The notes beneath the pieces were generated by a model. That model had not been told where the DNA came from. It saw only the letters and a program-made list of their open reading frames with translations, and did not search any database. From IMG/VR virus record IMGVR_UViG_3300032242_002454, positions 62,001 through 126,000 of that record: a stretch of 64,000 nucleotides of DNA. One strand, given 5' to 3'. The translations under genes and the position numbers were made by a program. The first letter of the stretch is position 1. The number at the start of each line of letters is the position of its first letter. Of the stretch, positions 43,844 to 56,578 are shown in pieces.

Positions 43844-44034
43844 ACATGAATGGTTTTATTCTGGTGTGGGTTTGGATGGGGGCTATGCTTTTTGTTTTGG
43901 GTTTTGTATATTTCCTTTCTATTGTAAGGGAAGTCTGGCAGAGACTTGCCGAATATGAGAGAATGAAGTCTAGGGGCTTTACTCTTATGAAAGATGAAAA
44001 TGGTGATGAGTTCTGGGTAGGATATGGGGATTGA
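43840..44034 (+). CDS. Single-TM small protein
   Basis: FILVWVWMGAMLFVLGFVYFLSIV hydrophobic segment. Confidence 0.65.
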   Translation: MNMNGFILVWVWMGAMLFVLGFVYFLSIVREVWQRLAEYERMKSRGFTLMKDENGDEFWVGYGD

Positions 44035-44215
44035 CCCAATAACACTGGAGATACAGGGATGTATCAATTTGATTTTATTAGTGTTGCTTTTGGTTATATT
44101 GTCGGTATCTTACTCTCTGCTAGTATGTCACATATCATGTATATGGAGGAAAATGATGAAATCGAGTGACTACATCTTATGGGGGGTATGTTTTACCCTT
44201 GGCTGCATTATGACG

Positions 44216-44293
44216 TATCTCCTTCACCAGTAAGGACTTACGACCAGCCCGGCCCGCCCCGCGAAGCGTAAGTGCTTATGCTGCAACACTTTA
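44216..44293 (+). repeat. Double-palindrome element E7
   Basis: tatctcctt-N7-aaggactta / 28 / taagtgctt-N7-aacacttta. Confidence 0.85.
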
Positions 44294-44423
44294 CGTCAAC
44301 AAAAAGATTTTTCATGTTTGGCATGAAATTATATTTTGGAATTTTCCAAGTTCCTGCTTGACACTAGCCGATAATAAGTGTAGAATCACAACACACGAAC
44401 GGTAACCACTAAGGAACAGAATC

Positions 44424-44597
44424 ATGCTGAACTTCGACGAGATCAACGACATTCTGAACGACATGGCCGAAGCGGGGATTGTTGAGCCGATGGTCGAGCC
44501 TATCGACGATCCTAGTGTGGAAGTGAATTTTTGGGATTGGGCAGACGTTGTGGGTGCTGTTGACGATTTCATTCCAGAGGAGTATATTGATGCTTAG
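44424..44597 (+). CDS. 57-aa acidic protein (not in track)
   Basis: MLNFDEINDILNDMAEAG...; 17 D/E and no K/R; promoter 44358, AAGGA RBS. Confidence 0.75.
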   Translation: MLNFDEINDILNDMAEAGIVEPMVEPIDDPSVEVNFWDWADVVGAVDDFIPEEYIDA

Positions 44598-44663
44598 TGC
44601 GATTGCTTTTGTTGTGAGCTATATTGGTTTGTTTTACACTATCACCATCGTGAGGGATTGACC

Positions 44664-44939
44664 ATGAGCTACGAATATGACGACCTTGAAGATTTTTATG
44701 GTATCGACGCTGATGATCGTACTAATGATTATTGGGCTGGAAATGATGATCTGGAGAATGATTCTGATGATTCGTTTGATGACAGTATGGATGGTGATGC
44801 TGAGTCTGCGTTGGCTTCCGCTGGATGGGGAACCGACGAGGACTATGGTTACTATGGTGACGATGGAGTAGAAGATTTCCATGCCGATGAGGCTGTGGGA
44901 TTCGTAGACTATAATGAGGATGGCCCATACGACGATTGA
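44664..44939 (+). CDS. Extremely acidic protein (DNA-mimic candidate)
   Basis: About 34 D/E in 91 aa, one R, no K, many Y/F/W. Confidence 0.7.
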   Translation: MSYEYDDLEDFYGIDADDRTNDYWAGNDDLENDSDDSFDDSMDGDAESALASAGWGTDEDYGYYGDDGVEDFHADEAVGFVDYNEDGPYDD

Positions 44940-44949
44940 AAATTCGCCG

Positions 44950-45027
44950 TAAACCCTTTGTGTATAAGCACTTAGGGCTTGCGCGGCCCGCCCGATTTGC
45001 TCTAAGTTCTTATTCTGCAACACTTTA
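44950..45027 (+). repeat. Double-palindrome element E8
   Basis: taaaccctt-N7-aagcactta / 28 / taagttctt-N7-aacacttta. Confidence 0.9.
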
Positions 45028-45122
45028 TGTCAACCTTGCGATATTGTAAGAAAACTATCTGCTTGACACCTAAAGTTTCTATGCTATACTTGTCGATATA
45101 AGAGATAGAGAAAGAGAGTGAC

Positions 45123-45296
45123 ATGATGAAAGTTTTGCAGTTGGTGTTGAACGGTGAGCCTCTGTCGTTTACGGTGGGAGCTACGGATTGGGCAGATGCT
45201 TGTGAAAAGTTTTCTGCTACCTACAGTTGGTTTGACGATTTGATGAAGTGTCAGTACGTTAGGATTTCTTTTCAAGAGGTTATGGGAAATGAGTAG
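45123..45296 (+). CDS. Hypothetical 57-aa protein (not in track)
   Basis: MMKVLQLVLNGEPLSF...; promoter 45063. Confidence 0.65.
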   Translation: MMKVLQLVLNGEPLSFTVGATDWADACEKFSATYSWFDDLMKCQYVRISFQEVMGNE

Positions 45297-45477
45297 GTAT
45301 TACGAAGGTCGTTTTAATCCGTACAATCGTCATGATACGGGAATGTATGTGGTCTATCGCAAGAGTGACAACAAGCATCTTGGAACGGTTGTGGATTGTC
45401 GTAGTGAGAGCGAAGCCAAGCGTAAGGCTAGCTACCAGTTTGATTGTGAGTGCTATGTTAGTGAGATTGAGGAATAA
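45289..45477 (+). CDS. Hypothetical early protein
   Basis: Coupled; GAGG RBS. Confidence 0.65.
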   Translation: MSRYYEGRFNPYNRHDTGMYVVYRKSDNKHLGTVVDCRSESEAKRKASYQFDCECYVSEIEE

Positions 45478-45478
45478 A

Positions 45479-45622
45479 ATGAAAACAAAAAAGAAAGAGT
45501 TGACAGCACACGAAAAAGCTGTTATACTCATGAATCGTGAAGCTGGTCGTGCAGTAAGTCGAGTTAAGTTGTTGGAACAGTTGTATTTTGAAACCATGAA
45601 AGCAAAGGAATTGGCAAAATGA
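45479..45622 (+). CDS. Hypothetical early protein
   Basis: GAGGA RBS before ATG 45479. Confidence 0.55.
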   Translation: MKTKKKELTAHEKAVILMNREAGRAVSRVKLLEQLYFETMKAKELAK

Positions 45623-45849
45623 AGTGCGTTGTGACTCATACGGATACGTTTGGTGGCGAAGCTAACTATGGCTGGGTGAATCGTTACGAGTTTATCCCCA
45701 AGAAGAATGCTAGCCAGCGTAGTGTTGTTCGTAAGGCTAAGGCTCTGGCTGGTATGACTGCGGTCAAGGCCGATACATGCGATTACGGCGACGGATATAC
45801 CGTCAAGCCTCGCGGTTATGCTCAGATCATCTTTGTTGATTTTGAGTAA
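45619..45849 (+). CDS. Hypothetical early protein
   Basis: ATGA-coupled; THTDTFGGEANYGWVNR. Confidence 0.7.
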   Translation: MKCVVTHTDTFGGEANYGWVNRYEFIPKKNASQRSVVRKAKALAGMTAVKADTCDYGDGYTVKPRGYAQIIFVDFE

Positions 45850-45867
45850 AAAAATAATCTCTCGTCG

Positions 45868-45945
45868 TAAACCCTTTGTGTTCAAGCACTTAGGGCCGAC
45901 GGGGGCGGCCGGATTTGCCGTAAGTCCTTATGCGTCAACACTTTA
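45868..45945 (+). repeat. Double-palindrome element E9
   Basis: taaaccctt-N7-aagcactta / 28 / taagtcctt-N7-aacacttta. Confidence 0.9.
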
Positions 45946-46043
45946 CGTCAATCCTTACAATCTCGTAAGATTCAAGTTTACCCCTTGCAATAGACGATAA
46001 TAGATAGTAGAATACGATATAGAAGAAAGGCAAGGGTGAGAGC

Positions 46044-46235
46044 ATGAGTCCTGACGGAAGCTATAATGGTTACGCAAACTATCAGACGTGGAATGTTTGT
46101 TTGTGGCTGAGTAATGATGAACTTCTGTGTAGTCTGGCTAAACAGTGTACCTCTTACGATCATTTCAAGATTTTGATTCGTGAGATTTTCGAGAAGGATA
46201 ATCTGAGGTTTGAGACTCCTGATGGTGTGGCTTGA
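46044..46235 (+). CDS. Hypothetical early protein
   Basis: YNGYANYQTWNVCLWLSND; promoter 45985. Confidence 0.7.
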   Translation: MSPDGSYNGYANYQTWNVCLWLSNDELLCSLAKQCTSYDHFKILIREIFEKDNLRFETPDGVA

Positions 46236-46377
46236 AATGACAGCGGCATCAATATTGCTGAAATGGTGGAGTATTGGGAAGAAAATTTTTCTAAAGTTCC
46301 CGCTTGACAAATGTCGATAATTAGTGTAGACTTGTGGCATGGATGTTTGATTGGTTTTCAATTTTGAAAGGGTTTCT

Positions 46378-46782
46378 ATGAGTGATACGATTTTGTTTGG
46401 TTCGATTCTTTCGGCTGTTGCCGTTGCTGTTGTGGGTTTCGTCTTCTATTCGGTCTATGGTGGATCGAAGGCTAGCTTGGCGAATGCCCAAGAGGGTCAG
46501 GTTTTCAACTTTGTTTATGAGCAGCCGTTGCATGGAACGCATGAGCGTTTTCTTGCTAAGGTGATTGGTAAGCAGACGTTGACTGTGGATCAGATTGCTA
46601 GACTCAATCGTAAGAGTCGTTATCGTGCTGGTGATCCTGAGTTCATCCGTACCAGTAATCTGGTAACGTGTCGAACCGCTGACGGCAAGGTGCGTAATTT
46701 CTATGCAGAGCGAGTGAGCAATTGCCGAAAGCCTCTTCTGGCCGGTGCTTTGTTCAAGAGTGGATTTGCTAACCTGTTCTAA
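46378..46782 (+). CDS. Membrane-anchored hypothetical protein
   Basis: N-terminal TM, then a WYL-like CRTADGKVRNFYAERV segment; promoter 46304. Confidence 0.7.
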   Translation: MSDTILFGSILSAVAVAVVGFVFYSVYGGSKASLANAQEGQVFNFVYEQPLHGTHERFLAKVIGKQTLTVDQIARLNRKSRYRAGDPEFIRTSNLVTCRTADGKVRNFYAERVSNCRKPLLAGALFKSGFANLF

Positions 46783-46818
46783 AAACTAGCAGTCTCTGCA
46801 CACTAACTGACCAACCCC

Positions 46819-46896
46819 TAACCCTTTGACACCAAAGGACTTAGGGCGAGGTCGGCCCGCCCGGCAAGTCGTAAGTCTTTATCTGACAACACTTTA
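46819..46896 (+). repeat. Double-palindrome element E10
   Basis: taacccttt-N7-aaggactta / 28 / taagtcttt-N7-aacacttta. Confidence 0.9.
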
Positions 46897-46980
46897 CGAC
46901 AATCTTTTTTGTTCAAGTTTTTCCTCTTGACAGGCCGATAATAGTAGTGTACAATACGAGGAACCTAAAGGAGAAAAAAG

Positions 46981-47256
46981 ATGCTGTTTACGCCATATGC
47001 TTTGACAAATCGGACAACGCGAACGATCACGACTGTGGACGGTGTGGATATGATTGAGTTCAGTGGGCTGTCCACTGGAGGTCGTGAGTTTTCCATCACT
47101 ACTCGACTTGACGATGCCCAGCGTTGGGTCAACGGAGAGTTGATTCAAGTTGCTTTTCCGTATCTCAATGCTGATGATCGTGAGATTCTCAAAACGGGAA
47201 TTGATGCTCAGGAGTGGGAAACGATGTTCGCAGGAACACAAGAGGAGGATGAATGA
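46981..47256 (+). CDS. Hypothetical early protein
   Basis: AAGGAG RBS; GELIQVAFPYLNADDREILKTGI. Confidence 0.75.
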   Translation: MLFTPYALTNRTTRTITTVDGVDMIEFSGLSTGGREFSITTRLDDAQRWVNGELIQVAFPYLNADDREILKTGIDAQEWETMFAGTQEEDE

Positions 47257-47402
47257 GTACCGATACCTATATGGTCATGAAGGGCAGCAAGATTGTTGGG
47301 TATGTTCAAGCGTACAGTACCTACCATGCTTTGCGTCAGGCTGAGAAACTTTATGGAAATAATTTGCTCATTGAGCGAATCTCTAAAGTTTGTCCTGCCT
47401 AA
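47253..47402 (+). CDS. Hypothetical 49-aa protein (not in track)
   Basis: GAGGAGG RBS; MSTDTYMVMKGSKIVGYV... Confidence 0.65.
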   Translation: MSTDTYMVMKGSKIVGYVQAYSTYHALRQAEKLYGNNLLIERISKVCPA

Positions 47403-47439
47403 TCCTACGGATTTGGGCTGTGTGGGTATAGTCAGCCAG
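47400..47439 (+). repeat. 40-bp family B repeat (TAATCC-N3-GGATTTGG...AGTCAGC)
   Basis: taatcctacggatttgggctgtgtgggtatagtcagccag. Confidence 0.75.
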
Positions 47440-47498
47440 TAGTCGGGACTTGACAAAGAGTCTTTGATAGAGTATATTGAGCAGAAAGGGAGAGGATT

Positions 47499-47702
47499 AT
47501 GTTGACAAGTGACGAAAGAGACGCTGTTTGTGGGTGTGTGGCTGATTTTGCTACTCGTTTGCTTACCGCTGCTACTATTGATGAGAAGTCTATGCACCAA
47601 GAACTGGATATTTTCTTTGAGTTCTTTTGTGAGGCTCTTGAGATTGCCAGAAGGGATGGGGTGGTTAGGGTTCGTGAGTCTATTGGTGCTAGTAATAACT
47701 AA
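47499..47702 (+). CDS. Hypothetical early protein
   Basis: Promoter 47450, GAGGA RBS; stop 4 nt before E11. Confidence 0.65.
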   Translation: MLTSDERDAVCGCVADFATRLLTAATIDEKSMHQELDIFFEFFCEALEIARRDGVVRVRESIGASNN

Positions 47703-47705
47703 TCG

Positions 47706-47783
47706 TAAGTCCTTATCCTTAAAGTACTTAGGGTAAGGCGGGGCGGCCGAATTTGACGTAAGTGCTTGTGTATCATAGGGTTA
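47706..47783 (+). repeat. Double-palindrome element E11
   Basis: taagtcctt-N7-aagtactta / 28 / taagtgctt-N7-atagggtta. Confidence 0.9.
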
Positions 47784-47859
47784 CATCAACTCTAAAAAAT
47801 TTTTGAAATTCCTATAGATAGGTGTTGACAACGGACGATAATAGATGTATACTTAGCAC

Positions 47860-48370
47860 ATAAGCAGATGAGGGCCTCTGGCAGAATGATATCAAAGAAG
47901 CCACGGTTAAATGCAAGGCCGAGTATGGCATAACCCAATCTGTTTATTTTACAATACAAAACTCGTGGGTCCATGCCTTGGACTAGGTTGGGATAGCCTA
48001 TTTCGATAAACACTGCGGCTGTAATGCAGCGTAGGGTTGCCAACGGGGCTATACGTTGGATAGAAGTACCAATCTATGGGGGATCGCGTCCTCACCACGT
48101 TATAATACAAGATGGCCGATGATAAAAAGACGCATAAGTCTGATCCTGTGTAGTGGATATAAAGGCATATTAAGCCACATACTACACCGGCCATCCCAAT
48201 ACAATCAGTAATCGTTCCCAAGAGCCAGACAGATTGCTTCATGAACAATCTCAGGGAGGTTTCCGTGGACGGTTTCCACTAGTGTTTACCTGGCCCAAGG
48301 GTTAAAAATATCGGGTATTAGTGGAGTATAGAACCGGAGTCGTAAATGGTTCGCTGGTTACAATACAAAG
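47860..48370 (+). ncRNA. Candidate large structured ncRNA (~510 nt, four domains joined by AAUACAA)
   Basis: Starts at the predicted +1 of promoter 47825-47853; no plausible plus-strand ORF; about 15 complementary stems found by eye; AATACAA at 47953, 48104, 48198, 48362. Confidence 0.65.
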
Positions 48371-48380
48371 GAGAAAGATA

Positions 48381-48590
48381 ATGATTGCTACAAAAGAATT
48401 GATTGCTGAAGCGAAACAACTTGCCAAAGACAACTATGAGAGTTGGGGCCAATACATAGTAGAGTGCTATGAAGATAGTGAGTTAGCCGAAAGCCTTAAA
48501 GATTTTGACAGCCTAGATGAATGGGTTGAAGTTAGAATCTCAATAGCAAACATATACGAGGAAAGAGAAGCTTTCTATGAGCAAGGATGA
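48381..48590 (+). CDS. Hypothetical protein
   Basis: AAGGAG RBS at the end of the structured region. Confidence 0.7.
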   Translation: MIATKELIAEAKQLAKDNYESWGQYIVECYEDSELAESLKDFDSLDEWVEVRISIANIYEEREAFYEQG

Positions 48591-48740
48591 AGCGATTATT
48601 AAGATTCTGAAAGTTTTGAAAAGCGCCATGATGGTGATGTGCAAGCCTAATAGGGATGAGGCATTGACTTTAGCAGAGGAGCATGGTATAACTGCTAAGG
48701 ATTTGATCGAGGTGTGGGAAAAGATAACGCTGAGGATATA

Positions 48741-48866
48741 ATGATCTACTTAAATATTAACGAGATCGAACGGTTGGCTGAAATTGTGGCTGAACTGGTT
48801 AAGTTGGATATGACTGTGATTGCTGAGTTGAAGGGGACTAAGTGGAGTATTGAGGTGACTAAATAA
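48741..48866 (+). CDS. Hypothetical 41-aa protein (not in track)
   Basis: GAGGA RBS; coupled to 48866. Confidence 0.55.
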   Translation: MIYLNINEIERLAEIVAELVKLDMTVIAELKGTKWSIEVTK

Positions 48867-49120
48867 TGGAATGGATTAGTTTTCACGGCCCTCGCCGCCC
48901 TATTAATGGTCAAAAGATAATCTATTATGGTGAGCCTATTGGTGTGTGGCGTGGAACATATAGGATAAATTATAATGATCCTTTTTGTATTCACAATATT
49001 GATTGTGGTGAAGCTCCCGGTAACGTAGACTATATGGATGCTCCGTGGTGGATGCCAGATGAGGGACAAGACAAGCCAGCACCGCCCAAAGAACATTATC
49101 CAAAAGATTATCCTAGTTGA
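48866..49120 (+). CDS. Hypothetical protein
   Basis: GAGG RBS; stop 3 nt before E12. Confidence 0.65.
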   Translation: MEWISFHGPRRPINGQKIIYYGEPIGVWRGTYRINYNDPFCIHNIDCGEAPGNVDYMDAPWWMPDEGQDKPAPPKEHYPKDYPS

Positions 49121-49122
49121 CA

Positions 49123-49200
49123 TAAGTCCTTGCTGCTAAAAGACTTAGCTCAAGGGCGCCCGGCCGGTTTCGTCGTAAGTCCTTGCTACTAAAGACTTTA
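49123..49200 (+). repeat. Double-palindrome element E12
   Basis: taagtcctt-N7-aaagactta / 28 / taagtcctt-N7-aagacttta. Confidence 0.9.
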
Positions 49201-49282
49201 CGATTAGCAATATTTCTTCAAGATTTCCTCTTGACTTGTCGATAATAGTAGTGTAAGATACTAGCAACACACGAAAGGGAAT

Positions 49283-49525
49283 ATGATGACTGTTGCTGAA
49301 CTGATCGAAGAATTGAACAAACTGCCACAAGATATGCTCGTGATGGTTCCGGGCTATGAGTGTGGATATGATAATGTTGAAGTTAGGCCTAATACTGCTG
49401 TTCGTCTAAATGATAATTGGGATGGACAAGAGAAGATTAATTGGTGGGATGGCAGACATTCTATGTCTTTCGGCCCTACTGAAGATGAGATTACGCATTG
49501 TGTTGTTCTTTGGAGAGGAAAATGA
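49283..49525 (+). CDS. Hypothetical protein
   Basis: MTVAELIEELNKLPQDMLVMV; promoter 49231. Confidence 0.7.
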   Translation: MMTVAELIEELNKLPQDMLVMVPGYECGYDNVEVRPNTAVRLNDNWDGQEKINWWDGRHSMSFGPTEDEITHCVVLWRGK

Positions 49526-50031
49526 AACAAGTAGAACTCCATGCCGAAGTGCGATTTCATCTGCTAAACGGGCCTAATTATAAAAAATGGCAAGTAAATA
49601 TTATGCAAGGTAAGAAAAGGGTTGACCAATTTTATGTAGACCCTACAGAATACCAGTTAGAGATGCGTGGTTGCAAACTGGTAAATAAGGTAGCTAGGGC
49701 AAAATGGGTCAATAAGAAACAAAAAAAGAATGTTAGTGGTTGGGTACAGTGCGAGGAGGTTATGCTTCGCAAGGATTTTTATCCCTCTTTGCCTATTGAC
49801 AATCTTGAAAAGTTGTATTACAATCCGATAAAAGATATCCATTGGCGACGAGAGAGTGATTGTGGTGAACATGTGTGGGATGATAGTGAGTATGACACCT
49901 TAGTTACCGATGGGCGACAGGTACATATTCTGGAAGAACGTGACGGAAATTTTGACGGCATTTACGAGATAGACCCTAAGTATACAGAAAGTTTTGGAAT
50001 TTATGATCAAGATCGAACTGAGCGTCCGTGA
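49522..50031 (+). CDS. Hypothetical protein
   Basis: GAGGA RBS; ATGA-coupled. Confidence 0.7.
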   Translation: MKQVELHAEVRFHLLNGPNYKKWQVNIMQGKKRVDQFYVDPTEYQLEMRGCKLVNKVARAKWVNKKQKKNVSGWVQCEEVMLRKDFYPSLPIDNLEKLYYNPIKDIHWRRESDCGEHVWDDSEYDTLVTDGRQVHILEERDGNFDGIYEIDPKYTESFGIYDQDRTERP

Positions 50032-50377
50032 GTCGTTGAACATGATTGCAAACGGTTGCAGTCTGGATATGTTCGACAAGATTGTGTGTGCGTTGGAGGT
50101 GGCGTTGGGTGTGAACCAGCGTCGTACCGTGACCATCACGGGTGGTATGACTCTCGACAATCGCATCCATTGCATCAAGGCAATTCGACTCCACACCGGA
50201 TGGGGTTTGAAGGAAGCCAAGGATTGGAGTGACTATCTGGTTGGTGGCTGGAAGTACGACAAGTGGTATCCAGCACCGGCAGGCGTTAAGCACAGCATGA
50301 CTCTGAAAACGCCCGAAGCGGCAGAGGCACTGCTGCGTGAATTGACTACCTTGGGTTGCGAGGGTTTTCTCTCTTGA
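50003..50377 (+). CDS. Ribosomal protein bL12 (L7/L12) C-terminal-domain-like protein
   Basis: NRIHCIKAIRLHTGWGLKEAKDWSD matches the bL12 CTD pattern K(I/V)xVIKxVRxxTGLGLKEAK. Confidence 0.7.
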   Translation: MIKIELSVRESLNMIANGCSLDMFDKIVCALEVALGVNQRRTVTITGGMTLDNRIHCIKAIRLHTGWGLKEAKDWSDYLVGGWKYDKWYPAPAGVKHSMTLKTPEAAEALLRELTTLGCEGFLS

Positions 50378-50379
50378 CC

Positions 50380-50457
50380 TAAAGCCTTGTCCCTAAAGAA
50401 CTTAGGGCGAGGCGGGGCGGCCGAATTTGATGTAAGTCCTTATCTGGAAAGAACTTA
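50380..50457 (+). repeat. Double-palindrome element E13
   Basis: taaagcctt-N7-aagaactta / 28 / taagtcctt-N7-aagaactta. Confidence 0.9.
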
Positions 50458-50661
50458 GGACAAAATCAAAAATCTTTGAGGCTCACTCAAGTTCATGGTT
50501 GACAATGACGATACTATACTGTAGAATGAGAGTATCACGAGACAAGACTCCGCGATGATGCCAACAACAGAAACCATCACGACGGACTTGACAAGTGGGT
50601 AACAGTAGCGTATACTGATACTAGAACGATTGGTAACTGTAACACTTTTGGAGAAGATAAG

Positions 50662-50916
50662 ATGAAGAAGTTTAGTTTTACTGTTGATGTGGTGTCTGAA
50701 GACTTGGATCGTGAGGCTACTGCCCAGACTCTTAATTTGTGTCTGACCGATTCCCTCCCCGAAGATGCTCATGCTCATGTAAAGATTGGCGAGGTTAAGG
50801 CGTTTTCTGAACAAGGTTGGAAGGTATTCCGTGCTAGGGTTATGGGTATTACGGCGAAGCAGGCTGGCGATGCCCACAATGGTAAGGTAGAGAATGAGGT
50901 TGAGACGGTTGCGTGA
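50662..50916 (+). CDS. Hypothetical protein
   Basis: Promoter 50590; GGAG RBS. Confidence 0.7.
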   Translation: MKKFSFTVDVVSEDLDREATAQTLNLCLTDSLPEDAHAHVKIGEVKAFSEQGWKVFRARVMGITAKQAGDAHNGKVENEVETVA

Positions 50917-50981
50917 CCAACTCTAAGGAGTTATAATGACTGTGAGCCTTCACGGGACGCCGTGGGGGCTTGCAGTATTAC

Positions 50982-51054
50982 GCCCCTGTAGCTCAGTAGA
51001 TAGAGCGGCGAGCTTCTACCTCGCGGGTCGGGAGTGCAACTCTCTCCAGGGGTA
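50982..51054 (+). tRNA. tRNA-Arg(TCT)
   Basis: Acceptor GCCCCTG/CAGGGGT; anticodon arm GCGAG-CTTCTAC-CTCGC; T-loop TGCAACT. Confidence 0.9.
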
Positions 51055-51540
51055 CTATATATGTGTCCATTGTTTATTAGAAACGATTCTTTTGATATGC
51101 TGATAAGAAACATTATATATTCTTCCTAAGTCAGCTAATGTATATTTATCAGTACTATATAGTATTCTAATCTCTTTAATATTCTCTTCTGAGAGTTTTG
51201 CTCTGCCATGATCGATGCCTAGTCTAGGTTTTGTTTTGTGAGATTTAGCAGTATTTGATGATCTTTCTAACCATTGTAGATTATCTATATGGTTATTAGA
51301 CATATCTCCATCAATATGGTCTATGGTGGGATGGATCATATCATTAGGTTTAGGCTCGCCCCAAACGTCCATAACTAATTGATAGATTTTTCTTCTATAT
51401 CCATTGCCAGTGTTAATAGTTAGGTAACCATCTTTGTCTTTAAATCCGATAAACTTTTGATACCTAAGACCAAAAATACGGCCATCTTTATAAACTAGAT
51501 AATTAGTATAAATTGGGTGTGTTTTTGCTTCGTTGTTCAT
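51055..51540 (-). CDS. HNH homing endonuclease with C-terminal DNA-binding domain
   Basis: TIDHIDGDMSNNHIDNLQWL; HGRAKLSE...TLADLGRIYNVS. GGAGG RBS before ATG 51540 (track start 51552). The only real minus-strand gene seen in the early region. Confidence 0.85.
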   Translation of the reverse strand: MNNEAKTHPIYTNYLVYKDGRIFGLRYQKFIGFKDKDGYLTINTGNGYRRKIYQLVMDVWGEPKPNDMIHPTIDHIDGDMSNNHIDNLQWLERSSNTAKSHKTKPRLGIDHGRAKLSEENIKEIRILYSTDKYTLADLGRIYNVSYQHIKRIVSNKQWTHI

Positions 51541-51568
51541 AATTTCCTCCATACCTTATAATACACCA

Positions 51569-51646
51569 CAAGTCCTTATTTGGCAAGTACTTAGGAGAAA
51601 TGCGGCGGGCCGGGTTTGACGTAAGTCGTTCTCGCATAAGGACTTA
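51569..51646 (+). repeat. Double-palindrome element E14
   Basis: caagtcctt-N7-aagtactta / 28 / taagtcgtt-N7-aaggactta. Confidence 0.9.
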
Positions 51647-51728
51647 GAGCAAAATATTTTTCACTAAAGAATATCTCTTGACTTAGCCGATTATTAGGTT
51701 ATACTTGATAGACACGAAAGGGAAAAGT

Positions 51729-52433
51729 ATGAAATACGCTATTGGTAATGACAAGTTGGGTAAGAATTGCTTGGTCGTGAGTCGTCCGGTTGGCGATACT
51801 TGCCCGCCCGATTGCGACTATCTTGGGAACGGATGCTATGCCGAAGCTACTGAAAATCAGTATAAAAATGCTCGCACTGCTGGATTCTCCAATATCATTA
51901 CGGAAAAGAATAAAATCCGTGCGATGATTCTGGAAGCAAAACGTACCCAAAAAAGTATTCGCTGGCAAGAACGTGGCGATTGGTTTCTCAATGGTGAACT
52001 TGACCTAGACTATGTTGCTAATGTAACGTGGGCTTGTGAGAGTATTCTTGCCGATGGTAACACTTTGCCCGATATGTGGTTTTATACTCATATCTACGAT
52101 GCTCGGCTTGTTAGTCTGGAAAAGTATATGAATGTATATGCTAGTGTGCATGACGATAATGATATGGGCGAAGCGTTGGCACAAGGTTTCAAGTTGTTTG
52201 CATGGTGTGATAGTGACATGAAGATTGCTCCCAAGCGTCCTAAGAGCAAAGTCAAGGCCGAAGCATGGCGACAAGCACTGCCCAAGCTGGTTGTTCTCAA
52301 CGCTACAAAGTTTGTGGTTTGTCCAGAAATCCGTCGTGGTCGTTCGGAAATCACTTGCACTGGCACTAAAGATAGTATATCATGTGACTTGTGTGTTCGT
52401 GGTTTGGCTAATGTCTTGTTTCCAGCCCATTGA
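51729..52433 (+). CDS. Gp88-like Cys-rich phage protein
   Basis: NDKL...TCPPDC...GCYA, RWQERGDW and C-terminal CPE...C...CDLC. Confidence 0.65.
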   Translation: MKYAIGNDKLGKNCLVVSRPVGDTCPPDCDYLGNGCYAEATENQYKNARTAGFSNIITEKNKIRAMILEAKRTQKSIRWQERGDWFLNGELDLDYVANVTWACESILADGNTLPDMWFYTHIYDARLVSLEKYMNVYASVHDDNDMGEALAQGFKLFAWCDSDMKIAPKRPKSKVKAEAWRQALPKLVVLNATKFVVCPEIRRGRSEITCTGTKDSISCDLCVRGLANVLFPAH

Positions 52434-52444
52434 AAGGAATAAAA

Positions 52445-53023
52445 ATGAGCTACGTTGGATTGTATGATGATGCAGGGAGTAAGAACGCTTTCTATATTAT
52501 CAAGGATAAAAAGATTGGCCGGAAGCGTGTGGGCTTCAAAGAGTTTGAGAATGAGCAGGAAGCTAAGTTTGCCCATCGGGTTCAAAAGCATCTGGCTCAG
52601 TTTGATTTGGCCCCTATGGTATATGGAGATGTTGGTTTTATTCGTAAACATGATGGCGAAATGACTTTTTATGGTTATTTGACCGAAGTTGCTCGGCCTA
52701 TGCCAGAGTGTAATGATGAAGATTGTTCTGGTGATTGTTTTCAGTGGTGTGAATGTAAAAATGGTACTGCTATCTCTGAAGTAGTTTGTTATTTGGGTGA
52801 ACACGGATTAGACTATAATGATGCCCATAGTGGTAATTTTGGTTATGTTCGACGCAAGGGAAAATGGATAGCGGTTGTTATCGACCTTGGAATTGAGAGC
52901 TTTACTGAATGGGATGAAGATATTTATGGGAAGTTTGATTACGATGCTGATGATGCTGTCGAGTTTGATGACTACGGCCGATGCAATTGTGTTCTATGTA
53001 AAAAGTTTCGAGAGGAACAATAA
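52445..53023 (+). CDS. Protein kinase-like (APH/Ser-Thr kinase fold) protein
   Basis: VGFK Lys motif, LAPMVYG, catalytic loop DAHSGN, DLG as the DFG equivalent. Confidence 0.75.
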   Translation: MSYVGLYDDAGSKNAFYIIKDKKIGRKRVGFKEFENEQEAKFAHRVQKHLAQFDLAPMVYGDVGFIRKHDGEMTFYGYLTEVARPMPECNDEDCSGDCFQWCECKNGTAISEVVCYLGEHGLDYNDAHSGNFGYVRRKGKWIAVVIDLGIESFTEWDEDIYGKFDYDADDAVEFDDYGRCNCVLCKKFREEQ

Positions 53024-53253
53024 TGAGCAAATACTATATCAAGTGTGGAACTCTAGAAATAATTTATTCCTGCAACAAATGCCCACGGGATGCTGCTATG
53101 GATGCTATCTGGGAAACAAATGAAAATGATACACTAGATGAGTATATCTATCTTGATGAACGTGGATATAGAGACTATAAAAATGCTGATGGTAAAACTT
53201 GTGTGTTGCATACTTCTCATATTCTCAAAGATGCTGGCTGGACATTAGAATAA
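53023..53253 (+). CDS. Hypothetical protein
   Basis: GAGG RBS; coupled. Confidence 0.65.
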   Translation: MSKYYIKCGTLEIIYSCNKCPRDAAMDAIWETNENDTLDEYIYLDERGYRDYKNADGKTCVLHTSHILKDAGWTLE

Positions 53254-53278
53254 ACATATAAAACAAAGGAGATATTTA

Positions 53279-53554
53279 ATGGAAAAGAAAGACGTACTAA
53301 ATAAGATGATTCCGGCCGATGATTTGCATTGGGTTGCTGATGAGGGTTTTGTGCTATTGAGTCTTGAAGAAGTAGAAGAGATTATTCAGACTGGGAAGGC
53401 TCAAGATATGTCTGAAGATGATATTATAAAGACCGTAAGATGGTGTGAGAGCATTAGAACCGGACAAGTATTATGGAAAAATATTCTAGCGGGAGGTATC
53501 CGTATTCATCACTTTGAAAATGACGAACCTATCTTTACGAAAGGCGTAGCGTAA
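53279..53554 (+). CDS. Hypothetical protein
   Basis: AAGGAG RBS. Confidence 0.7.
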   Translation: MEKKDVLNKMIPADDLHWVADEGFVLLSLEEVEEIIQTGKAQDMSEDDIIKTVRWCESIRTGQVLWKNILAGGIRIHHFENDEPIFTKGVA

Positions 53555-53562
53555 TCTTACCG

Positions 53563-53640
53563 CAAACCCTTGGTGCGTAAGCACTTAGGGCAAGCGGGGC
53601 CGCCCGGCTTTGACGTAAGTCCTTATCCGTCAACACTTTA
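53563..53640 (+). repeat. Double-palindrome element E15
   Basis: caaaccctt-N7-aagcactta / 28 / taagtcctt-N7-aacacttta. Confidence 0.9.
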
Positions 53641-53696
53641 GAGCAAATCTAAAAATCTTTTAAAGTTTCTCTACTAGACTGGTCGATAATATTGGT

Positions 53697-54092
53697 ATGG
53701 AAACGAAGCAAGAAATCAAAAGGAATGGACAGATGATCCAGTGGGTTGGGATTGTGATTACGATTTTGGGTTTGGCGTATACGGGAATCAAAGATTATCA
53801 AAAAGGTGATATAAAATTCCCTCCCATGCCTCAGAAACCGGCCTTGACAAAGATAGTTTATCCGGTACAATACTGTCTGATGGCTTACGACCCTAATGTT
53901 GACAAAGTTTTTTATCTACACGAAAACGGACAATGGCATGATTACGCTCCACAACAACGACGATACCAGACCACGCCGCAACCATATCAAGATCAAGGTC
54001 AGGCCGCAGTGGCAAGTTCCTACGGGTCACAAGGAACACCGCAATACTATTATGGACAATCGCCCCAAGCGTCTGCGAACCCGATCCGCTGA
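53697..54092 (+). CDS. Membrane-anchored protein with Q/Y-rich tail
   Basis: TM WVGIVITILGLAY; low-complexity C-terminus. Confidence 0.6.
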   Translation: METKQEIKRNGQMIQWVGIVITILGLAYTGIKDYQKGDIKFPPMPQKPALTKIVYPVQYCLMAYDPNVDKVFYLHENGQWHDYAPQQRRYQTTPQPYQDQGQAAVASSYGSQGTPQYYYGQSPQASANPIR

Positions 54093-54142
54093 AAAGCGTA
54101 GAGCTTGCGAGAGTGAGGATTATTGAGTATAATTAGTAGTAT

Positions 54143-54215
54143 GCCAGTGTAGCTCAGTCAGCAGAGCGTCAAATTTGTAATTTGAATGTCGCGGGTGCAA
54201 CTCCTGCCACTGGCT
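54143..54215 (+). tRNA. tRNA-Thr(TGT)
   Basis: GCCAGTG/CACTGGC; TCAAA-TTTGTAA-TTTGA; T-loop TGCAACT. Confidence 0.9.
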
Positions 54216-54281
54216 TTATGAGTCGAAAGAAAAAACGTATGTAAACGCTCTATCTGGTGTATATATTCGTATCCAGAGGAG

Positions 54282-54809
54282 ATGTCTATGATTGTAAAAT
54301 GTAGTTGCTGTAATAAAGAGTTTAATAAGCAGAAGTACGAGGTAATTAAGTCAAAAAATAATTACTGCTCACGTTCCTGTGCAGCAAAAATAAACAATAG
54401 GCTATTTAAAAAGAGAAGAAAAAAAGTTAGGCATTGTACGAACTGTAAGATTGAAATTATTGGCAAGGGAAAACTTTATTGTAGTATTAAATGTCAAAAT
54501 GTTTTTCAGTCAGAAATAAAGATAAAGTCATGGCAGCTAGGAATGGACGATGGATACGAAACTAATGGAACAGTAAGGAGGTATATAAAAAAATTCTTAC
54601 TGGAAAAAAGAGGTCAGAAATGTGAGGAGTGCGGTTGGAATAAAATCAATCCAAATACCAATAAGTGTCCATTGGAAATACATCATAGGGATGGAAATTA
54701 TAAAAATAATATAGAAGAGAACTTACAAATACTATGTCCGAATTGCCATTCATTGACAGATACATATAAGAATATGAACAAAGGTAATGGTAGAGAATGT
54801 AGAAGATGA
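54282..54809 (+). CDS. HNH endonuclease with N-terminal zinc-finger repeats
   Basis: CSCC...YCSRSC, CTNC...YCSIKC, CEECG...LEIHHRDGNYKNNIEENLQILCPNCH. Confidence 0.85.
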   Translation: MSMIVKCSCCNKEFNKQKYEVIKSKNNYCSRSCAAKINNRLFKKRRKKVRHCTNCKIEIIGKGKLYCSIKCQNVFQSEIKIKSWQLGMDDGYETNGTVRRYIKKFLLEKRGQKCEECGWNKINPNTNKCPLEIHHRDGNYKNNIEENLQILCPNCHSLTDTYKNMNKGNGRECRR

Positions 54810-54880
54810 TCCGGGATGGTGAAATGGTATCACAGCAGACTTTGGATCTGCGTTTCTACGTTCAAGTCGTAGTCCCGGAA
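54810..54880 (+). tRNA. tRNA-Gln(TTG)
   Basis: TCCGGGA/TCCCGGA; GCAGA-CTTTGGA-TCTGC. Confidence 0.9.
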
Positions 54881-54884
54881 TTAT

Positions 54885-54956
54885 TGGCGAGTAGCACAAC
54901 GGTTGTGCAAGCGGCTGTTAACCGCTAGGTTACAGGTTCGAATCCTGTCTCGCCAG
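54885..54956 (+). tRNA. tRNA-Asn(GTT)
   Basis: TGGCGAG/CTCGCCA; AGCGG-CTGTTAA-CCGCT. Confidence 0.9.
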
Positions 54957-54961
54957 CTTGA

Positions 54962-55048
54962 GGAAGAATGGCAGAGCGGTCTAATGCATCTGATTACTAA
55001 TCAGAAGAAGTGTAAAAACTTCCGTGGGTTCGAATCCTACTTCTTCCG
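54962..55048 (+). tRNA. tRNA-Ser with unusual ACT anticodon
   Basis: GGAAGAA/TTCTTCC; TCTGA-TTACTAA-TCAGA; long variable arm; canonical TTCGAAT T-loop. Confidence 0.85.
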
Positions 55049-55078
55049 TTCGGAGGCTGATGTTTGAGTTACGAAAAC

Positions 55079-55149
55079 ATTGGAGTAGTTCAACGGTAGA
55101 ATGACGGTCTCCAAAACCGTAGATGAGGGTTCGATTCCCTCCTCCTTTG
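55079..55149 (+). tRNA. tRNA-Trp(CCA), imperfect acceptor stem
   Basis: ACGGT-CTCCAAA-ACCGT; T-arm GAGGG-TTCGATT-CCCTC; acceptor ATTGGAG/CTCCTTT has two U-U mismatches. Confidence 0.65.
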
Positions 55150-55152
55150 CTT

Positions 55153-55224
55153 GGCCCCATAGTATAGTAGTTAGTACGCTGGCCTTTCACGCCGGAGACC
55201 TGGGAGCGTAACCCAGTGGGGTCA
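55153..55224 (+). tRNA. tRNA-Glu(TTC)
   Basis: GGCCCCA/TGGGGTC; CTGGC-CTTTCAC-GCCGG; atypical T-loop AGCGTAA. Confidence 0.85.
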
Positions 55225-55235
55225 TTTGTTTCTGC

Positions 55236-55275
55236 TAATCCTGCGGATTTGGAAGCTGTGGGAATAGTCAGCGAG
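55236..55275 (+). repeat. 40-bp family B repeat
   Basis: taatcctgcggatttggaagctgtgggaatagtcagcgag. Confidence 0.75.
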
Positions 55276-55346
55276 AATCCTAAAGTTTTGGGTGTTGACA
55301 GACCGATATTGGTATGGTAGACTGTTGGAACAAGAAAGGAAACTGT

Positions 55347-55520
55347 ATGAAGAATCTTCGTATCTACGACATTGTGACCGAGGATGGTAAAACTCTGGCA
55401 GATATTCAACTATCCATGCAAGAGGATTTTGAATGGTCGGATGTTTTTGATAAGCTCTATGATTTTACAACCGAGAGCGTCCAAAGTTATTCTTACGAGG
55501 AAATTACCGTAACCGAATAA
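55347..55520 (+). CDS. Small acidic hypothetical protein
   Basis: Promoter 55295; AAGGA RBS. Confidence 0.65.
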   Translation: MKNLRIYDIVTEDGKTLADIQLSMQEDFEWSDVFDKLYDFTTESVQSYSYEEITVTE

Positions 55521-55526
55521 TAAGGC

Positions 55527-55599
55527 GGGGCTTTAGCTCAGTTGGTAGAGCAAGGGTCTTTTAAACCTTTGGTCGTGGGTTCAAGTCCCACAGGCCCCA
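55527..55599 (+). tRNA. tRNA-Lys(TTT)
   Basis: GGGGCTT/AGGCCCC; AGGGT-CTTTTAA-ACCTT; TTCAAGT T-loop. Confidence 0.9.
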
Positions 55600-55651
55600 C
55601 TTGACAGTTGTTGATTGTTGGTGTAGAATAGAGGTAAGAAAGGGAGTAATT

Positions 55652-55828
55652 ATGAGATATGAAGATCACTATGATGGCTACAATTATGACTACGATGAAT
55701 TGGTAGAAAATACCGAGGATCTTGGTCTAGACGAAGAACCTTGGATGGATGGGTATGAGGAAGAAGATGACGAGGTTCCTTCATATGGTAAGAATTACTA
55801 TCCTAGTATTGAGGATGATCAGGACTGA
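55652..55828 (+). CDS. Highly acidic Tyr-rich small protein
   Basis: 23 D/E and 9 Y in 58 aa; promoter 55601, GGAG RBS. Confidence 0.7.
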   Translation: MRYEDHYDGYNYDYDELVENTEDLGLDEEPWMDGYEEEDDEVPSYGKNYYPSIEDDQD

Positions 55829-55890
55829 TTTTTGTGTGTGCTTCTAGGTGGGACTAGACCCTATTCTTTATTCCTTTCTTCTTCTCGGGA

Positions 55891-56418
55891 TTGTCGGTTC
55901 AAATCCGGCCACACACTTTTATGAACGCTTTCCAGCAAGAGCTTGATGATTTTCGACGTACCCCAGACGGTAAGATCATTCAAGGGGCTGCTCATACTAG
56001 CCGAGTATTAAATCACAAATATCGGAATGGTGTGATTATCAAGGCTGTCTGTTCTCTGCGTAAGATTGAGAATGATTTTGACAGTATTGCTTGTTGTGGC
56101 GTAAGTGGTTTGATGGTAGTGCCACAGATTGCGGAGATTCTCAATAAGAATATTATCGTTGTTCGTAAGGATGAAAGACGGTATAGTCAATTTTATATCG
56201 AAGGAGTATCTCCGTCTCGGTATGTTATTGTGGATGATTTGATTTGCTCTGGTGATACAATTAAGCATATTATTGGCAGTATTCATTTTGATACTCCGCG
56301 AGCAAAATGTATTGGTGCATATTTCTACATGGGTGAAGAGTGTGCCTACAATGCTTCTAATTCTAAACTTTTTGAGAAGCAGTTCGGGACGGTTATTCTA
56401 AACCCTTACGCTGATTAG
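55891..56418 (+). CDS. Type I phosphoribosyltransferase-like protein
   Basis: PRPP-binding motif YVIVDDLICSGDT; IACCGVSG; start may be ATG 55921. Confidence 0.8.
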   Translation: MSVQIRPHTFMNAFQQELDDFRRTPDGKIIQGAAHTSRVLNHKYRNGVIIKAVCSLRKIENDFDSIACCGVSGLMVVPQIAEILNKNIIVVRKDERRYSQFYIEGVSPSRYVIVDDLICSGDTIKHIIGSIHFDTPRAKCIGAYFYMGEECAYNASNSKLFEKQFGTVILNPYAD

Positions 56419-56476
56419 ACTTAGGACGAAACCGGGCGCCCCGGCGAGCCGTAAGTCCTTATCTATCAACCACTTA
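56399..56476 (+). repeat. Double-palindrome element E16 (overlaps the PRTase stop)
   Basis: taaaccctt-N7-ttagactta / 28 / taagtcctt-N7-aaccactta. Confidence 0.85.
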
Positions 56477-56578
56477 CGACGAAAAGAATTTTTCCAAAGT
56501 TTTCGCTTGACACTGCCGATAATATAGTGTAGAATCAGTGGACAAGAACGATTGAACAGCAACACGAAAGGGATGATT

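What the first reader, a model, noticed from the sequence alone, without database searches (positions are those of the whole stretch)
44424..55828. Several very acidic, aromatic-rich small early proteins: DNA-mimic candidates
44424-44597 (17 D/E in 57 aa, no K/R), 44664-44939 (about 34 D/E in 91 aa) and 55652-55828 (23 D/E, 9 Y in 58 aa) each lie behind strong early promoters. Known DNA mimics and inhibitors (T7 Ocr, ArdA, AcrIIA4, UGI) are small and acidic. Anti-restriction, anti-CRISPR or RNAP-inhibitor roles are inferred only.
Basis: inference. Interest (0 to 1): 0.6.

Follow-up and report, generated by a model that had tools for sequence, protein, structure and literature searches.

The report
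Acidic disordered early phage proteins
Three tiny, extremely acidic proteins of an uncultured freshwater jumbo phage are real, conserved genes, and one carries a 25-residue motif kept almost unchanged in over a thousand phage protein families; none resembles a known folded DNA mimic and their target is still unknown.

Summary
The three ORFs (here AcP57, AcP91, AcP58) have exactly the stated composition. They are the three most acidic ORFs of the 204.6-kb phage genome. They sit in a GC-rich block packed with near-consensus sigma-70 promoters, and they evolve under purifying selection (median dN/dS 0.12-0.24).

The DNA-mimic reading is only partly supported. No sequence or fold relation to any solved protein was found. 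AcP91 is predicted fully disordered (pLDDT 55). AcP57 gives a small non-compact model with no structural neighbour.

New findings:
- An AcP57 homologue lies directly upstream in every fetched locus whose motif protein is all-acidic.
- AcP91's core (residues 38-62) is a 25-residue module with no indels. It occurs in 1,234 clusters of small, mostly phage proteins, usually at the C-terminus behind unrelated N-terminal domains (HTH-like, zinc-ribbon-like, acidic). It matches only phrog_36991, of unknown function.

Best reading, by inference: these are flexible polyanionic decoys that dock through conserved acidic and aromatic linear motifs onto a highly conserved host protein. The closest analogue is the disordered acidic region of SPO1 Gp44, not Ocr or ArdA. 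The target is unknown.

The parts
44216..44299 (+). Copy of an ~84-nt intergenic repeat (invariant ACTTA...TAAGT arms around a GC-rich centre) that closes the preceding cassette
   Evidence: 16 copies in window 39.5-57.7 kb; no Rfam family; conserved in sequence, no covariation
44358..44386 (+). Sigma-70-type promoter TTGACA-17-TAGAAT of the AcP57 operon
   Evidence: 11 of 12 consensus match; sequence read
44424..44597 (+). AcP57: 57 aa, net -17, no K/R; conserved core with a W-D-W aromatic cluster
   Evidence: Composition; 249 homologues; invariant and near-invariant columns; dN/dS 0.24; AF2 pLDDT 82.5, pTM 0.44, helix 4-16 and helix 36-43
44590..44661 (+). Conserved 23-aa hydrophobic micro-ORF (one membrane-span length). 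Its ATG overlaps the end of AcP57 and its stop lies 2 nt before the AcP91 ATG
   Evidence: Intact in 22 distinct DNA variants with many synonymous changes, pN/pS 0.27; a hydrophobic micro-ORF occurs in 26 of 39 distinct spacers
44664..44939 (+). AcP91: 91 aa, net -33; variable acidic N-terminus, 25-aa core motif, extra conserved acidic/aromatic C-terminal tail
   Evidence: Composition; 2289 homologues; alignment A1; dN/dS 0.13; AF2 pLDDT 55 with no secondary structure
44775..44849 (+). Core motif, residues 38-62 of AcP91 (consensus y-D-D-S-M-D-G-D-h-x-S-A-l-a-S-a-G-w-G-T-D-E-D-Y-G)
   Evidence: 1234 clusters at E<=1e-3, matched over profile positions ~29-71; same 25-aa length in 149 of 150 representatives, 14 positions at least 95% identical; 54 of 60 relatives hit phrog_36991
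44950..45033 (+). Next copy of the 84-nt repeat, ending the operon; followed by a small hairpin and the next promoter (45063-45090)
55527..55600 (+). tRNA-Lys (UUU), last of a cluster of 8 tRNAs, abutting the AcP58 promoter
55601..55629 (+). Sigma-70-type promoter TTGACA-17-TAGAAT of AcP58
55652..55828 (+). AcP58: 58 aa, net -21, 9 Y; conserved Tyr-rich N-terminal motif and a P-S-Y-G-K-N-Y-Y-P block
   Evidence: Composition; 89 homologues; 31 IMG/VR loci, all in the same ~200-kb phage clade; invariant columns; dN/dS 0.12; disordered side of the charge-hydropathy plot

Best explanation
The three ORFs are genuine genes of the phage's host-RNA-polymerase-read (presumably early) region. They encode polyanionic proteins that are largely disordered (AcP91, AcP58) or only minimally structured (AcP57). 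I read them as decoys that bind protein, not as enzymes or rigid scaffolds. Conserved short linear motifs, made of invariant Gly, Asp and Glu residues plus aromatic residues, would dock onto a basic, probably nucleic-acid-binding surface of a very conserved host protein, and the surrounding acidic chain would add charge competition with DNA or RNA. AcP57, a 23-aa membrane-length micro-protein and AcP91 are made from one promoter as a conserved three-cistron unit and probably act together. AcP91's 25-residue core is a portable module that many unrelated phages attach to the C-terminus of other small domains. Shown here: that the genes are real, their composition, promoters, operon layout, conservation, motif distribution and predicted disorder. 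Inferred: early timing, binding to a host protein, nucleic-acid mimicry, and any anti-defence or shut-off role.
For: Extreme acidity and outlier status. Purifying selection in the sense frame only. Near-consensus promoters concentrated in this block. AcP91 predicted without structure, and AcP91/AcP58 far on the disordered side. Even so, the motif is almost invariant and free of indels across 149 of 150 representatives of clusters at 50% identity, on viral contigs of 6-244 kb whose fetched flanks have GC 35-64%. That argues for a target more conserved than phage proteins themselves. The motif sits behind HTH-like (sigma region 4 / LuxR-like) or zinc-ribbon-like N-domains, one of which hits Lar restriction alleviation. 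This is the same layout as SPO1 Gp44, where a DNA-binding N-domain is joined to a disordered acidic region that binds RNAP beta and beta' (PMC8208478). An AcP57 homologue lies directly upstream in all 49 fetched loci whose motif protein is all-acidic, although the neighbouring genes are shuffled. Short contigs from lake metatranscriptome libraries cover relatives of AcP57, the micro-ORF and AcP91. This is consistent with transcription but is not proof.
Against: No binding partner was identified and no homology to any characterised inhibitor was found. Five invariant glycines and zero indels suggest a precise bound or metal-bound conformation rather than a fuzzy polyanion. The hydrophobic micro-ORF inside the operon hints at a membrane-associated role that a simple cytoplasmic DNA-mimic model does not explain. 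Early expression was not measured, and the RNA-library contigs could derive from contaminating DNA. The host is unknown.
Confidence: 0.4

Rival explanations
1. Classical rigid DNA mimics (Ocr/ArdA/AcrIIA4/UGI-like): each protein folds, perhaps as a dimer, into a scaffold whose carboxylates copy the B-DNA backbone and which blocks R-M, CRISPR, RecBCD or UDG.
For: Small size, pI about 4, 30-40% D/E and an early-type promoter. AcP57 gives a fairly confident model (pLDDT 82.5).
Against: No sequence match to any PDB chain, which includes the solved mimics. The AcP57 model is not compact (pTM 0.44) and has no structural neighbour. AcP91 has no predicted secondary structure. AcP91 and AcP58 fall far into the disordered region of the charge-hydropathy plot.
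Confidence: 0.1
2. Cargo-and-tag model: the 25-residue motif is an address label, not an inhibitor. It would deliver the variable N-terminal domains to a common machine such as a chaperone, protease adaptor, membrane complex or virion-packaging site. AcP91 would then be an almost cargo-less version, working with AcP57 and the membrane micro-protein.
For: A constant C-terminal module behind very diverse N-terminal domains, typically 6 residues from the C-terminus. A membrane-length micro-ORF sits in the same operon, and in one database protein a similar hydrophobic stretch is read in frame with the acidic protein.
Against: No secretion, packaging or degradation partner was seen nearby. The genomic contexts in other phages are heterogeneous. 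The motif occurs in phages too diverse to share one phage-encoded receptor. The genes sit in the promoter-dense early-type block, not among structural genes.
Confidence: 0.15
3. Metal-binding mini-motif: the D-x-S-x-D-G-D and G-x-G-T-D-E-D segments chelate Ca2+ or Mg2+ (EF-hand, DxDxDG or RTX-like turns) and fold only with metal. The proteins would buffer or sense divalent cations, or present a metal to a target active site.
For: Invariant Asp and Gly spacing with no indels, which resembles known Ca2+-binding loops (my own knowledge). Predicted disorder without ligand.
Against: The canonical EF-hand position-12 Glu is a Leu or Met here, and the RTX register is off by one (read). No Pfam calcium-binding family is hit. 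Free Ca2+ in bacterial cytoplasm is low.
Confidence: 0.1
4. Acidic effector tail of small phage transcription factors: the motif contacts RNA polymerase or a sigma factor to redirect transcription. The stand-alone AcP91 would titrate the same site.
For: Many family members carry an N-terminal HTH that resembles sigma region 4 or LuxR-type domains. Gp44 is a precedent. This is a more specific version of the best explanation.
Against: No RNAP interaction was tested. Many family members have zinc-ribbon-like or unrelated N-termini. AcP57 and AcP91 have no DNA-binding domain.
Confidence: 0.15
5. Spurious ORFs or low-complexity DNA that encodes no functional protein.
For: Biased composition; long open antisense frames.
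Against: dN/dS 0.12-0.24, sense frame intact in all 22-38 distinct variants, other sense frames always closed. Ribosome-binding sites and promoters are present. Hundreds to thousands of homologues with position-specific conservation.
Confidence: 0.02

Closest known systems
SPO1 Gp44 (host-takeover protein of a Bacillus phage; PMC8208478)
   Same: An early phage protein whose active part is an intrinsically disordered, extremely acidic segment proposed to mimic flexible single-stranded DNA and to bind RNAP beta and beta'. An HTH-like N-terminal domain precedes the acidic part, as in many carriers of the AcP91 motif.
   Different: No sequence similarity. Gp44 is 237 aa with 57% D/E in its acidic region; AcP91 has 37% D/E and a sharply conserved 25-residue core rather than loose acidic repeats. 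AcP57, AcP91 and AcP58 themselves lack a DNA-binding domain. RNAP binding was not tested here.
T7 Ocr and ArdA (rigid dsDNA mimics; PMC2806950, PMC3439906, PMC2731889)
   Same: Small, very acidic, early or leading-region proteins of mobile elements that act by occupying DNA-binding grooves.
   Different: Ocr and ArdA are stably folded dimers whose carboxylates copy bent B-DNA. AcP91 is predicted to have no structure, AcP57 has no related fold, and there is no sequence match.
Small acidic binders of nucleoid protein HU (Neisseria DMP12, PMC3643605; E. coli MsyB, bioRxiv 10.1101/2025.02.25.640118)
   Same: Small acidic proteins that target a basic, conserved DNA-binding protein.
   Different: These are folded proteins with no homology to the three studied here; HU binding was not tested.
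Acidic C-terminal tails with a terminal aromatic residue (bacterial SSB-Ct D-D-D-I-P-F; tails of T7 gp2.5 and gp4; my own knowledge, SSB-Ct also in PMC7913777)
   Same: A disordered acidic peptide with an aromatic anchor used as a protein-docking handle. 45% of motif proteins end in Y, F or W, and AcP57 has a D-D-F-I-P-E-E segment near its end.
   Different: The conserved core is longer, lies internal to the tail and is unlike SSB-Ct. The AcP57 segment is not at the C-terminus, which SSB-Ct recognition requires.
phrog_36991 (PHROGs v4, unknown function)
   Same: 54 of 60 motif proteins match it; AcP91 itself matches weakly (E 0.031).
   Different: The family carries no annotation, so membership explains nothing about function.

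Membership tests
DNA mimic proteins of the Ocr/ArdA/UGI/AcrIIA4 kind | Small protein with a high D/E content and low pI | tested here: met
   30-40% D/E, computed pI about 4.05, net -17 to -33
DNA mimic proteins of the Ocr/ArdA/UGI/AcrIIA4 kind | Stable compact fold that displays carboxylates in the geometry of the DNA phosphate backbone | tested here: not met
   AcP91: pLDDT 55, pTM 0.10, no secondary structure. AcP58: disordered by charge-hydropathy only, not folded here. AcP57: inconclusive, pLDDT 82.5 but pTM 0.44 and an extended middle. This rests on prediction only.
DNA mimic proteins of the Ocr/ArdA/UGI/AcrIIA4 kind | Sequence or fold relation to a solved mimic | tested here: not met
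   Profile searches against all PDB sequences found nothing real. Foldseek PDB, VIA-align wide (best Z 2.4), BFVD and Atlas found nothing for AcP57
DNA mimic proteins of the Ocr/ArdA/UGI/AcrIIA4 kind | Competitive binding to the DNA site of a DNA-binding protein | not testable with these tools
   Needs pull-down, EMSA competition or protection assays
Flexible acidic mimic of the SPO1 Gp44 kind | Intrinsically disordered segment dominated by D/E and nearly free of K/R/H | tested here: met
   AcP91 has 1 R and 1 H in 91 aa; AcP58 has 1 K, 1 R and 1 H; AcP57 has none; predicted disorder
Flexible acidic mimic of the SPO1 Gp44 kind | Attached DNA-binding domain and binding to RNAP beta/beta' | tested here: inconclusive
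   There is no such domain in the three window proteins. HTH-like N-domains occur in many motif relatives. RNAP binding cannot be tested here
phrog_36991 / 25-residue M-D-G-D...G-T-D-E-D-Y-G motif family | Presence of the indel-free 25-residue core | tested here: met
   AcP91 residues 38-62; 54 of 60 relatives hit phrog_36991. AcP57 and AcP58 lack the motif
SSB C-terminal tail mimics | Acidic stretch ending in a hydrophobic residue, Pro, then Phe at the very C-terminus | tested here: not met
   The AcP57 D-D-F-I-P segment is followed by six more residues; AcP91 and AcP58 end in D. A few distant motif proteins do end in A-P-F or E-P-F
EF-hand / DxDxDG calcium loops | 12-residue loop with Asp/Asn/Ser at positions 1, 3 and 5, Gly at 6 and Glu at 12 | tested here: not met
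   Positions 1, 3, 5 and 6 fit (D39, S41, D43, G44) but position 12 is Leu or Met. No Pfam calcium-binding family is hit
Anti-CRISPR or anti-restriction families | Homology to a characterised Acr or Ard family | tested here: inconclusive
   No Pfam, PHROG or PDB match for the three proteins. One distant motif protein has a Lar-like N-domain. No dedicated anti-defence library was available

The most novel reading that the evidence does not exclude
The 25-residue core of AcP91 is a so far undescribed, portable host-docking module of environmental phages. In this reading it is a nearly invariant peptide that over a thousand phage protein families append to different small domains in order to reach one invariant site on a core bacterial machine such as RNA polymerase. 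In its stand-alone all-acidic form it works as an obligate unit with AcP57 and, in this clade, a 23-residue membrane micro-protein.
Probability: 0.25. Interest if true: 0.8.

Novelty: new variant of a known kind. Interest (0 to 1): 0.6.

Why it matters
Small acidic early proteins are where phages keep their inhibitors of host defence and host gene expression, and most are orphans. One of them here turns out to belong to a very large family with no functional annotation, defined by a peptide conserved far better than the phages that carry it. That makes the question testable: a single synthetic 25-residue peptide with point-mutant controls could be used to fish out the target from model bacteria. 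If the target is a core machine, the motif would be a compact, transferable inhibitor or handle, and a marker for annotating over a thousand uncharacterised protein clusters, most of them from phage contigs. The conserved operon of acidic protein, membrane micro-protein and acidic protein is also an unexplained arrangement worth testing.

Tried and rejected
- Megablast of both loci against 50,697 deposited phage records found no match. The major capsid protein only reaches Bacillus phage G at 21% identity, so no annotated relative could be used.
- tblastn of two motif proteins against deposited phages found nothing usable. BLAST's low-complexity filter probably masks the motif.
- Pfam and PHROGs gave nothing for the three proteins except a weak phrog_36991 hit for AcP91.
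- ESM Atlas search by features gave no hit for AcP57. For AcP91 it returned only unnamed viral clusters.
- Fold searches of the AcP57 model in PDB (Foldseek and VIA-align wide), BFVD and the Atlas found nothing above noise.
- Rosetta-stone idea, that AcP57 equals the N-terminal HTH-like domain of fused motif proteins: hhalign gave probability 0.6%, so it was rejected.
- Complex prediction of AcP57 with AcP91 gave no verdict (score 0.00). This is evidence neither for nor against binding.
- A full-text search for the motif strings found no relevant paper. The S-M-D-G-D hits are topoisomerase papers. I noticed from memory a superficial likeness to a short GyrA/ParC segment and to the RNAP D-F-D-G-D loop, and I treat both as coincidence.
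Its disorder rests on composition only.
- The 84-nt repeat has no Rfam family and no covarying structure.

Full report
NAMES
AcP57 is window 44424-44597, AcP91 is 44664-44939 and AcP58 is 55652-55828. Alignment ids do not follow these names: A1 is the AcP91 family, A2 the AcP57 family, A3 the AcP58 family, A4 diverse carriers of the AcP91 motif, and A5 the motif carriers with an HTH-like N-terminus.

SETTING
The window is bases 62001-126000 of a single 204,625-bp contig.
- It encodes a large terminase subunit, a distant HK97-type major head protein (21% identity to that of Bacillus phage G), Mtd-type tail fibres and a DUF285/fn3 protein. It is therefore a jumbo tailed phage without a close deposited relative.
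- DNA nearly identical to the region occurs in many freshwater metagenomes from 16 studies.
- Window 38-58 kb stands out. Its GC is 0.41-0.47 against 0.30-0.36 elsewhere. It consists of small ORFs and most of the window's 8 tRNA genes, nearly all on the + strand. It holds 21 sigma-70-type promoters matching at least 11 of 12 consensus positions, all on the + strand.
- In the whole genome, 21 of 45 such + strand sites lie in these 20 kb.
- I take this as the region read by unmodified host RNA polymerase, that is the early region. This is an inference from promoter type, not a measurement.

THE OBSERVATION
- Net charge per residue is -0.30, -0.36 and -0.36. A crude gene set of the genome has mean 0.00 and sd 0.07, and its next most acidic ORF scores -0.27.
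- All 6 aromatic residues of AcP57, 13 of 15 in AcP91 and 7 of 10 in AcP58 have an acidic residue within two positions.
- The genes are real. Each has a ribosome-binding site and an ATG. They have 249, 2289 and 89 database homologues.
- In 38, 24 and 22 distinct DNA variants taken from related contigs, the sense frame is always intact and the two shifted sense frames are never open. Median pairwise dN/dS is 0.24, 0.13 and 0.12.
- The long antisense ORFs listed over them stay open only because the complements of GAx codons contain no stops.

PROMOTERS AND OPERON
- AcP57 and AcP58 each follow a TTGACA-17-TAGAAT promoter. The AcP58 promoter starts at the base after tRNA-Lys.
- AcP91 has no consensus promoter of its own. 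It lies 66 nt behind AcP57.
- That spacer holds a 23-codon hydrophobic ORF (44590-44661). Its ATG overlaps the last codons of AcP57 and its stop lies 2 nt before the AcP91 ATG.
- This micro-ORF is intact in 22 distinct DNA variants that differ by many synonymous changes (pN/pS 0.27). A hydrophobic micro-ORF of some kind occurs in 26 of 39 distinct spacers between an AcP57 homologue and the motif gene.
- The unit is therefore promoter, AcP57, membrane-length micro-protein, AcP91, then an 84-nt repeat.
- One short contig from a lake RNA library spans the 3' part of AcP57, the micro-ORF and the start of AcP91, and another covers most of an AcP91 relative. These are assembled contigs, so they show presence in RNA libraries but prove neither a transcript nor its timing.

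CONSERVATION
- AcP58 is confined to the same clade of roughly 200-kb phage contigs (31 IMG/VR loci).
- AcP57 is broader. In every fetched locus where the neighbouring motif protein is of the all-acidic type, an AcP57 homologue lies directly upstream on the same strand. That is 49 loci, with AcP57 identity down to 38%. It is absent where the motif protein has a folded-looking N-terminal domain.
- The pairing holds although the flanking cassettes are reordered between relatives.

THE AcP91 MOTIF
A profile of the AcP91 family found 1,234 clusters at E<=1e-3 among 1.84 billion cluster representatives at 50% identity.
- The shared part is only residues 38-62 of AcP91.
- In 149 of the 150 best representatives this 25-residue core has the same length, and 14 positions are at least 95% identical. 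These include one Met, five Gly, five Asp, one Glu, one Ser and one Tyr.
- The core sits a median of 6 residues from the C-terminus. AcP91 is unusual in carrying a further conserved 29-residue acidic and aromatic tail.
- The parts in front of the core are unrelated to each other. Some are a three-helix HTH-like domain with weak resemblance to sigma region 4, LuxR-type and transposase HTH domains. Some are zinc-ribbon-like CxxC pairs, one of which matches the Lar restriction-alleviation family. Some are all-acidic N-termini such as that of AcP91 or an M-S-H-P-D-P-L-F-D type.
The 80 loci fetched lie on contigs of 5-244 kb, and their flanks have GC 35-64%.
- Among about 186,000 species genomes there are only 20 loci, all in metagenome-assembled genomes.
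- The only library family that matches is phrog_36991, of unknown function (54 of 60 members). Pfam has none. No paper in the library contains the motif.

STRUCTURE
- AcP57, predicted with its alignment, gives a helix at 4-16, an extended stretch, and a short helix at 36-43. Confidence is pLDDT 82.5 but pTM only 0.44. No structural neighbour was found in PDB, BFVD or the ESM Atlas.
- AcP91 gives pLDDT 55, pTM 0.10 and no secondary structure.
- By the charge-hydropathy criterion, AcP91 and AcP58 are deep in the disordered region and AcP57 is borderline.
- Profile searches of all three families against every PDB sequence found nothing real. The hits for AcP57 were designed armadillo repeats with no significant stretch.

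INTERPRETATION
The specific comparison with Ocr, ArdA, AcrIIA4 and UGI does not survive. Those are rigid folds (PMC2806950, PMC2731889), whereas at least two of the three proteins here are predicted to be disordered.

The closest described case is SPO1 Gp44. Its disordered, 57% acidic middle region is proposed to mimic flexible single-stranded DNA and binds RNAP beta and beta', and it follows an HTH-like DNA-binding domain (PMC8208478). This is the same architecture as the HTH-plus-motif members of the AcP91 family.

The motif is far better conserved than the phages that carry it, and it occurs across fetched loci of GC 35-64%. I take this to mean that its partner is a very conserved host protein. 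The invariant glycines and the absence of indels suggest a defined bound conformation, or a metal-bound one.

Against a simple cytoplasmic mimic stands the membrane-length micro-protein in the operon. No model I have explains it. The rival readings (rigid mimic, address tag, metal-binding loop, RNAP-directed effector tail, artefact) are given with their tests in the Rival explanations section.

One co-folding job of AcP57 with AcP91 returned no verdict and is not used as evidence.

NOVELTY
Acidic early phage inhibitors are a known kind, so the three proteins as such are not a new category. Three things appear to be undescribed:
- the size and sharpness of the motif family;
- its modular use behind unrelated domains;
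- the conserved operon of AcP57, micro-protein and AcP91.

I rate the finding as a new variant of a known kind, with interest 0.6.

Noticed in passing
window 39526-57696 (16 copies, e.g. 42189-42272, 44216-44299, 44950-45033): An ~84-nt intergenic repeat with invariant ACTTA...TAAGT arms around a GC-rich centre. It is often followed by a small CCTTAC...GTAAGG hairpin with a T-run and then a consensus promoter, so that most cassettes of one to a few genes are bracketed. It has no Rfam family, and it is conserved in sequence without covariation. It resembles the promoter-terminator cassettes (PeSLs) that mediate gene shuffling in T4-type phages (PMC2839356, PMC4122927).
   Followed up: partly
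window 38000-58000 (genome 100-120 kb): A compositional island. GC is 0.41-0.47 against 0.30-0.36 in the rest of the phage genome, with strong positive GC skew, and it holds about half of the genome's near-consensus sigma-70 promoters. Why the early region is 10 GC points richer is unexplained.
   Followed up: partly
window 43326-43508 compared with L001 10425-10601 and L002 3122-3298: Gene order in the early block is shuffled between relatives. A 58-60-aa gene that lies upstream of AcP57 here lies downstream of the AcP91 homologue in a relative with 62% AcP91 identity, while the AcP57-AcP91 pair stays together.
   Followed up: partly
window 1019-13090 (-): A single 4023-aa ORF next to the structural genes has no Pfam match at all.
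   Followed up: partly
window 49994-50377 (+): An early-region 127-aa protein with a just sub-threshold match to the C-terminal domain of ribosomal protein L7/L12 (E 2e-5, 25.3 bits against a cut-off of 25.9). The same weak hit is on record for a relative's gene.
   Followed up: no
window 50982-55600, plus 51055-51552 (-) and 54282-54809 (+): Eight tRNA genes (Arg, Thr, Gln, Asn, Ser, Trp, Glu, Lys) lie among the early cassettes. Two ORFs among them show HNH-like Cys/His motifs by eye. Pfam gave no hit for 54282-54809, and the other ORF was not scanned.
   Followed up: no
window 55885-55915 (+): Just downstream of AcP58 there is a sequence that looks like a tRNA T-arm (a stem with a TTCAAAT loop). 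ARAGORN and Rfam call no full tRNA there, so it may be a tRNA remnant.
   Followed up: no
window 55891-56418 (+) and 56552-57532 (+): A weak phosphoribosyltransferase-like protein (Pribosyltran / PRTase-CE, both below cut-off) and a clear DUF932 protein (E 6e-49) close the early block.
   Followed up: no
window 14395-16268 (+), 35150-36130 (-): Carbohydrate genes inside the phage: a glycosyltransferase, an alginate lyase (E 3e-48) and a GDP-mannose 4,6-dehydratase (E 2e-118).
   Followed up: no
window 38753-38989, 48381-48590, 55347-55520 (+); genome 153324-153572: Further acidic small ORFs (net charge per residue -0.17 to -0.27), less extreme than the three studied. They come from a crude ORF call and were not examined.
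   Followed up: no
L079 1984 and 4010 (IMGVR_UViG_3300021962_008382): One unrelated 159-kb viral contig carries two different HTH-plus-motif genes about 2 kb apart, both ending in A-P-F, which resembles the tip of the bacterial SSB tail.
   Followed up: no
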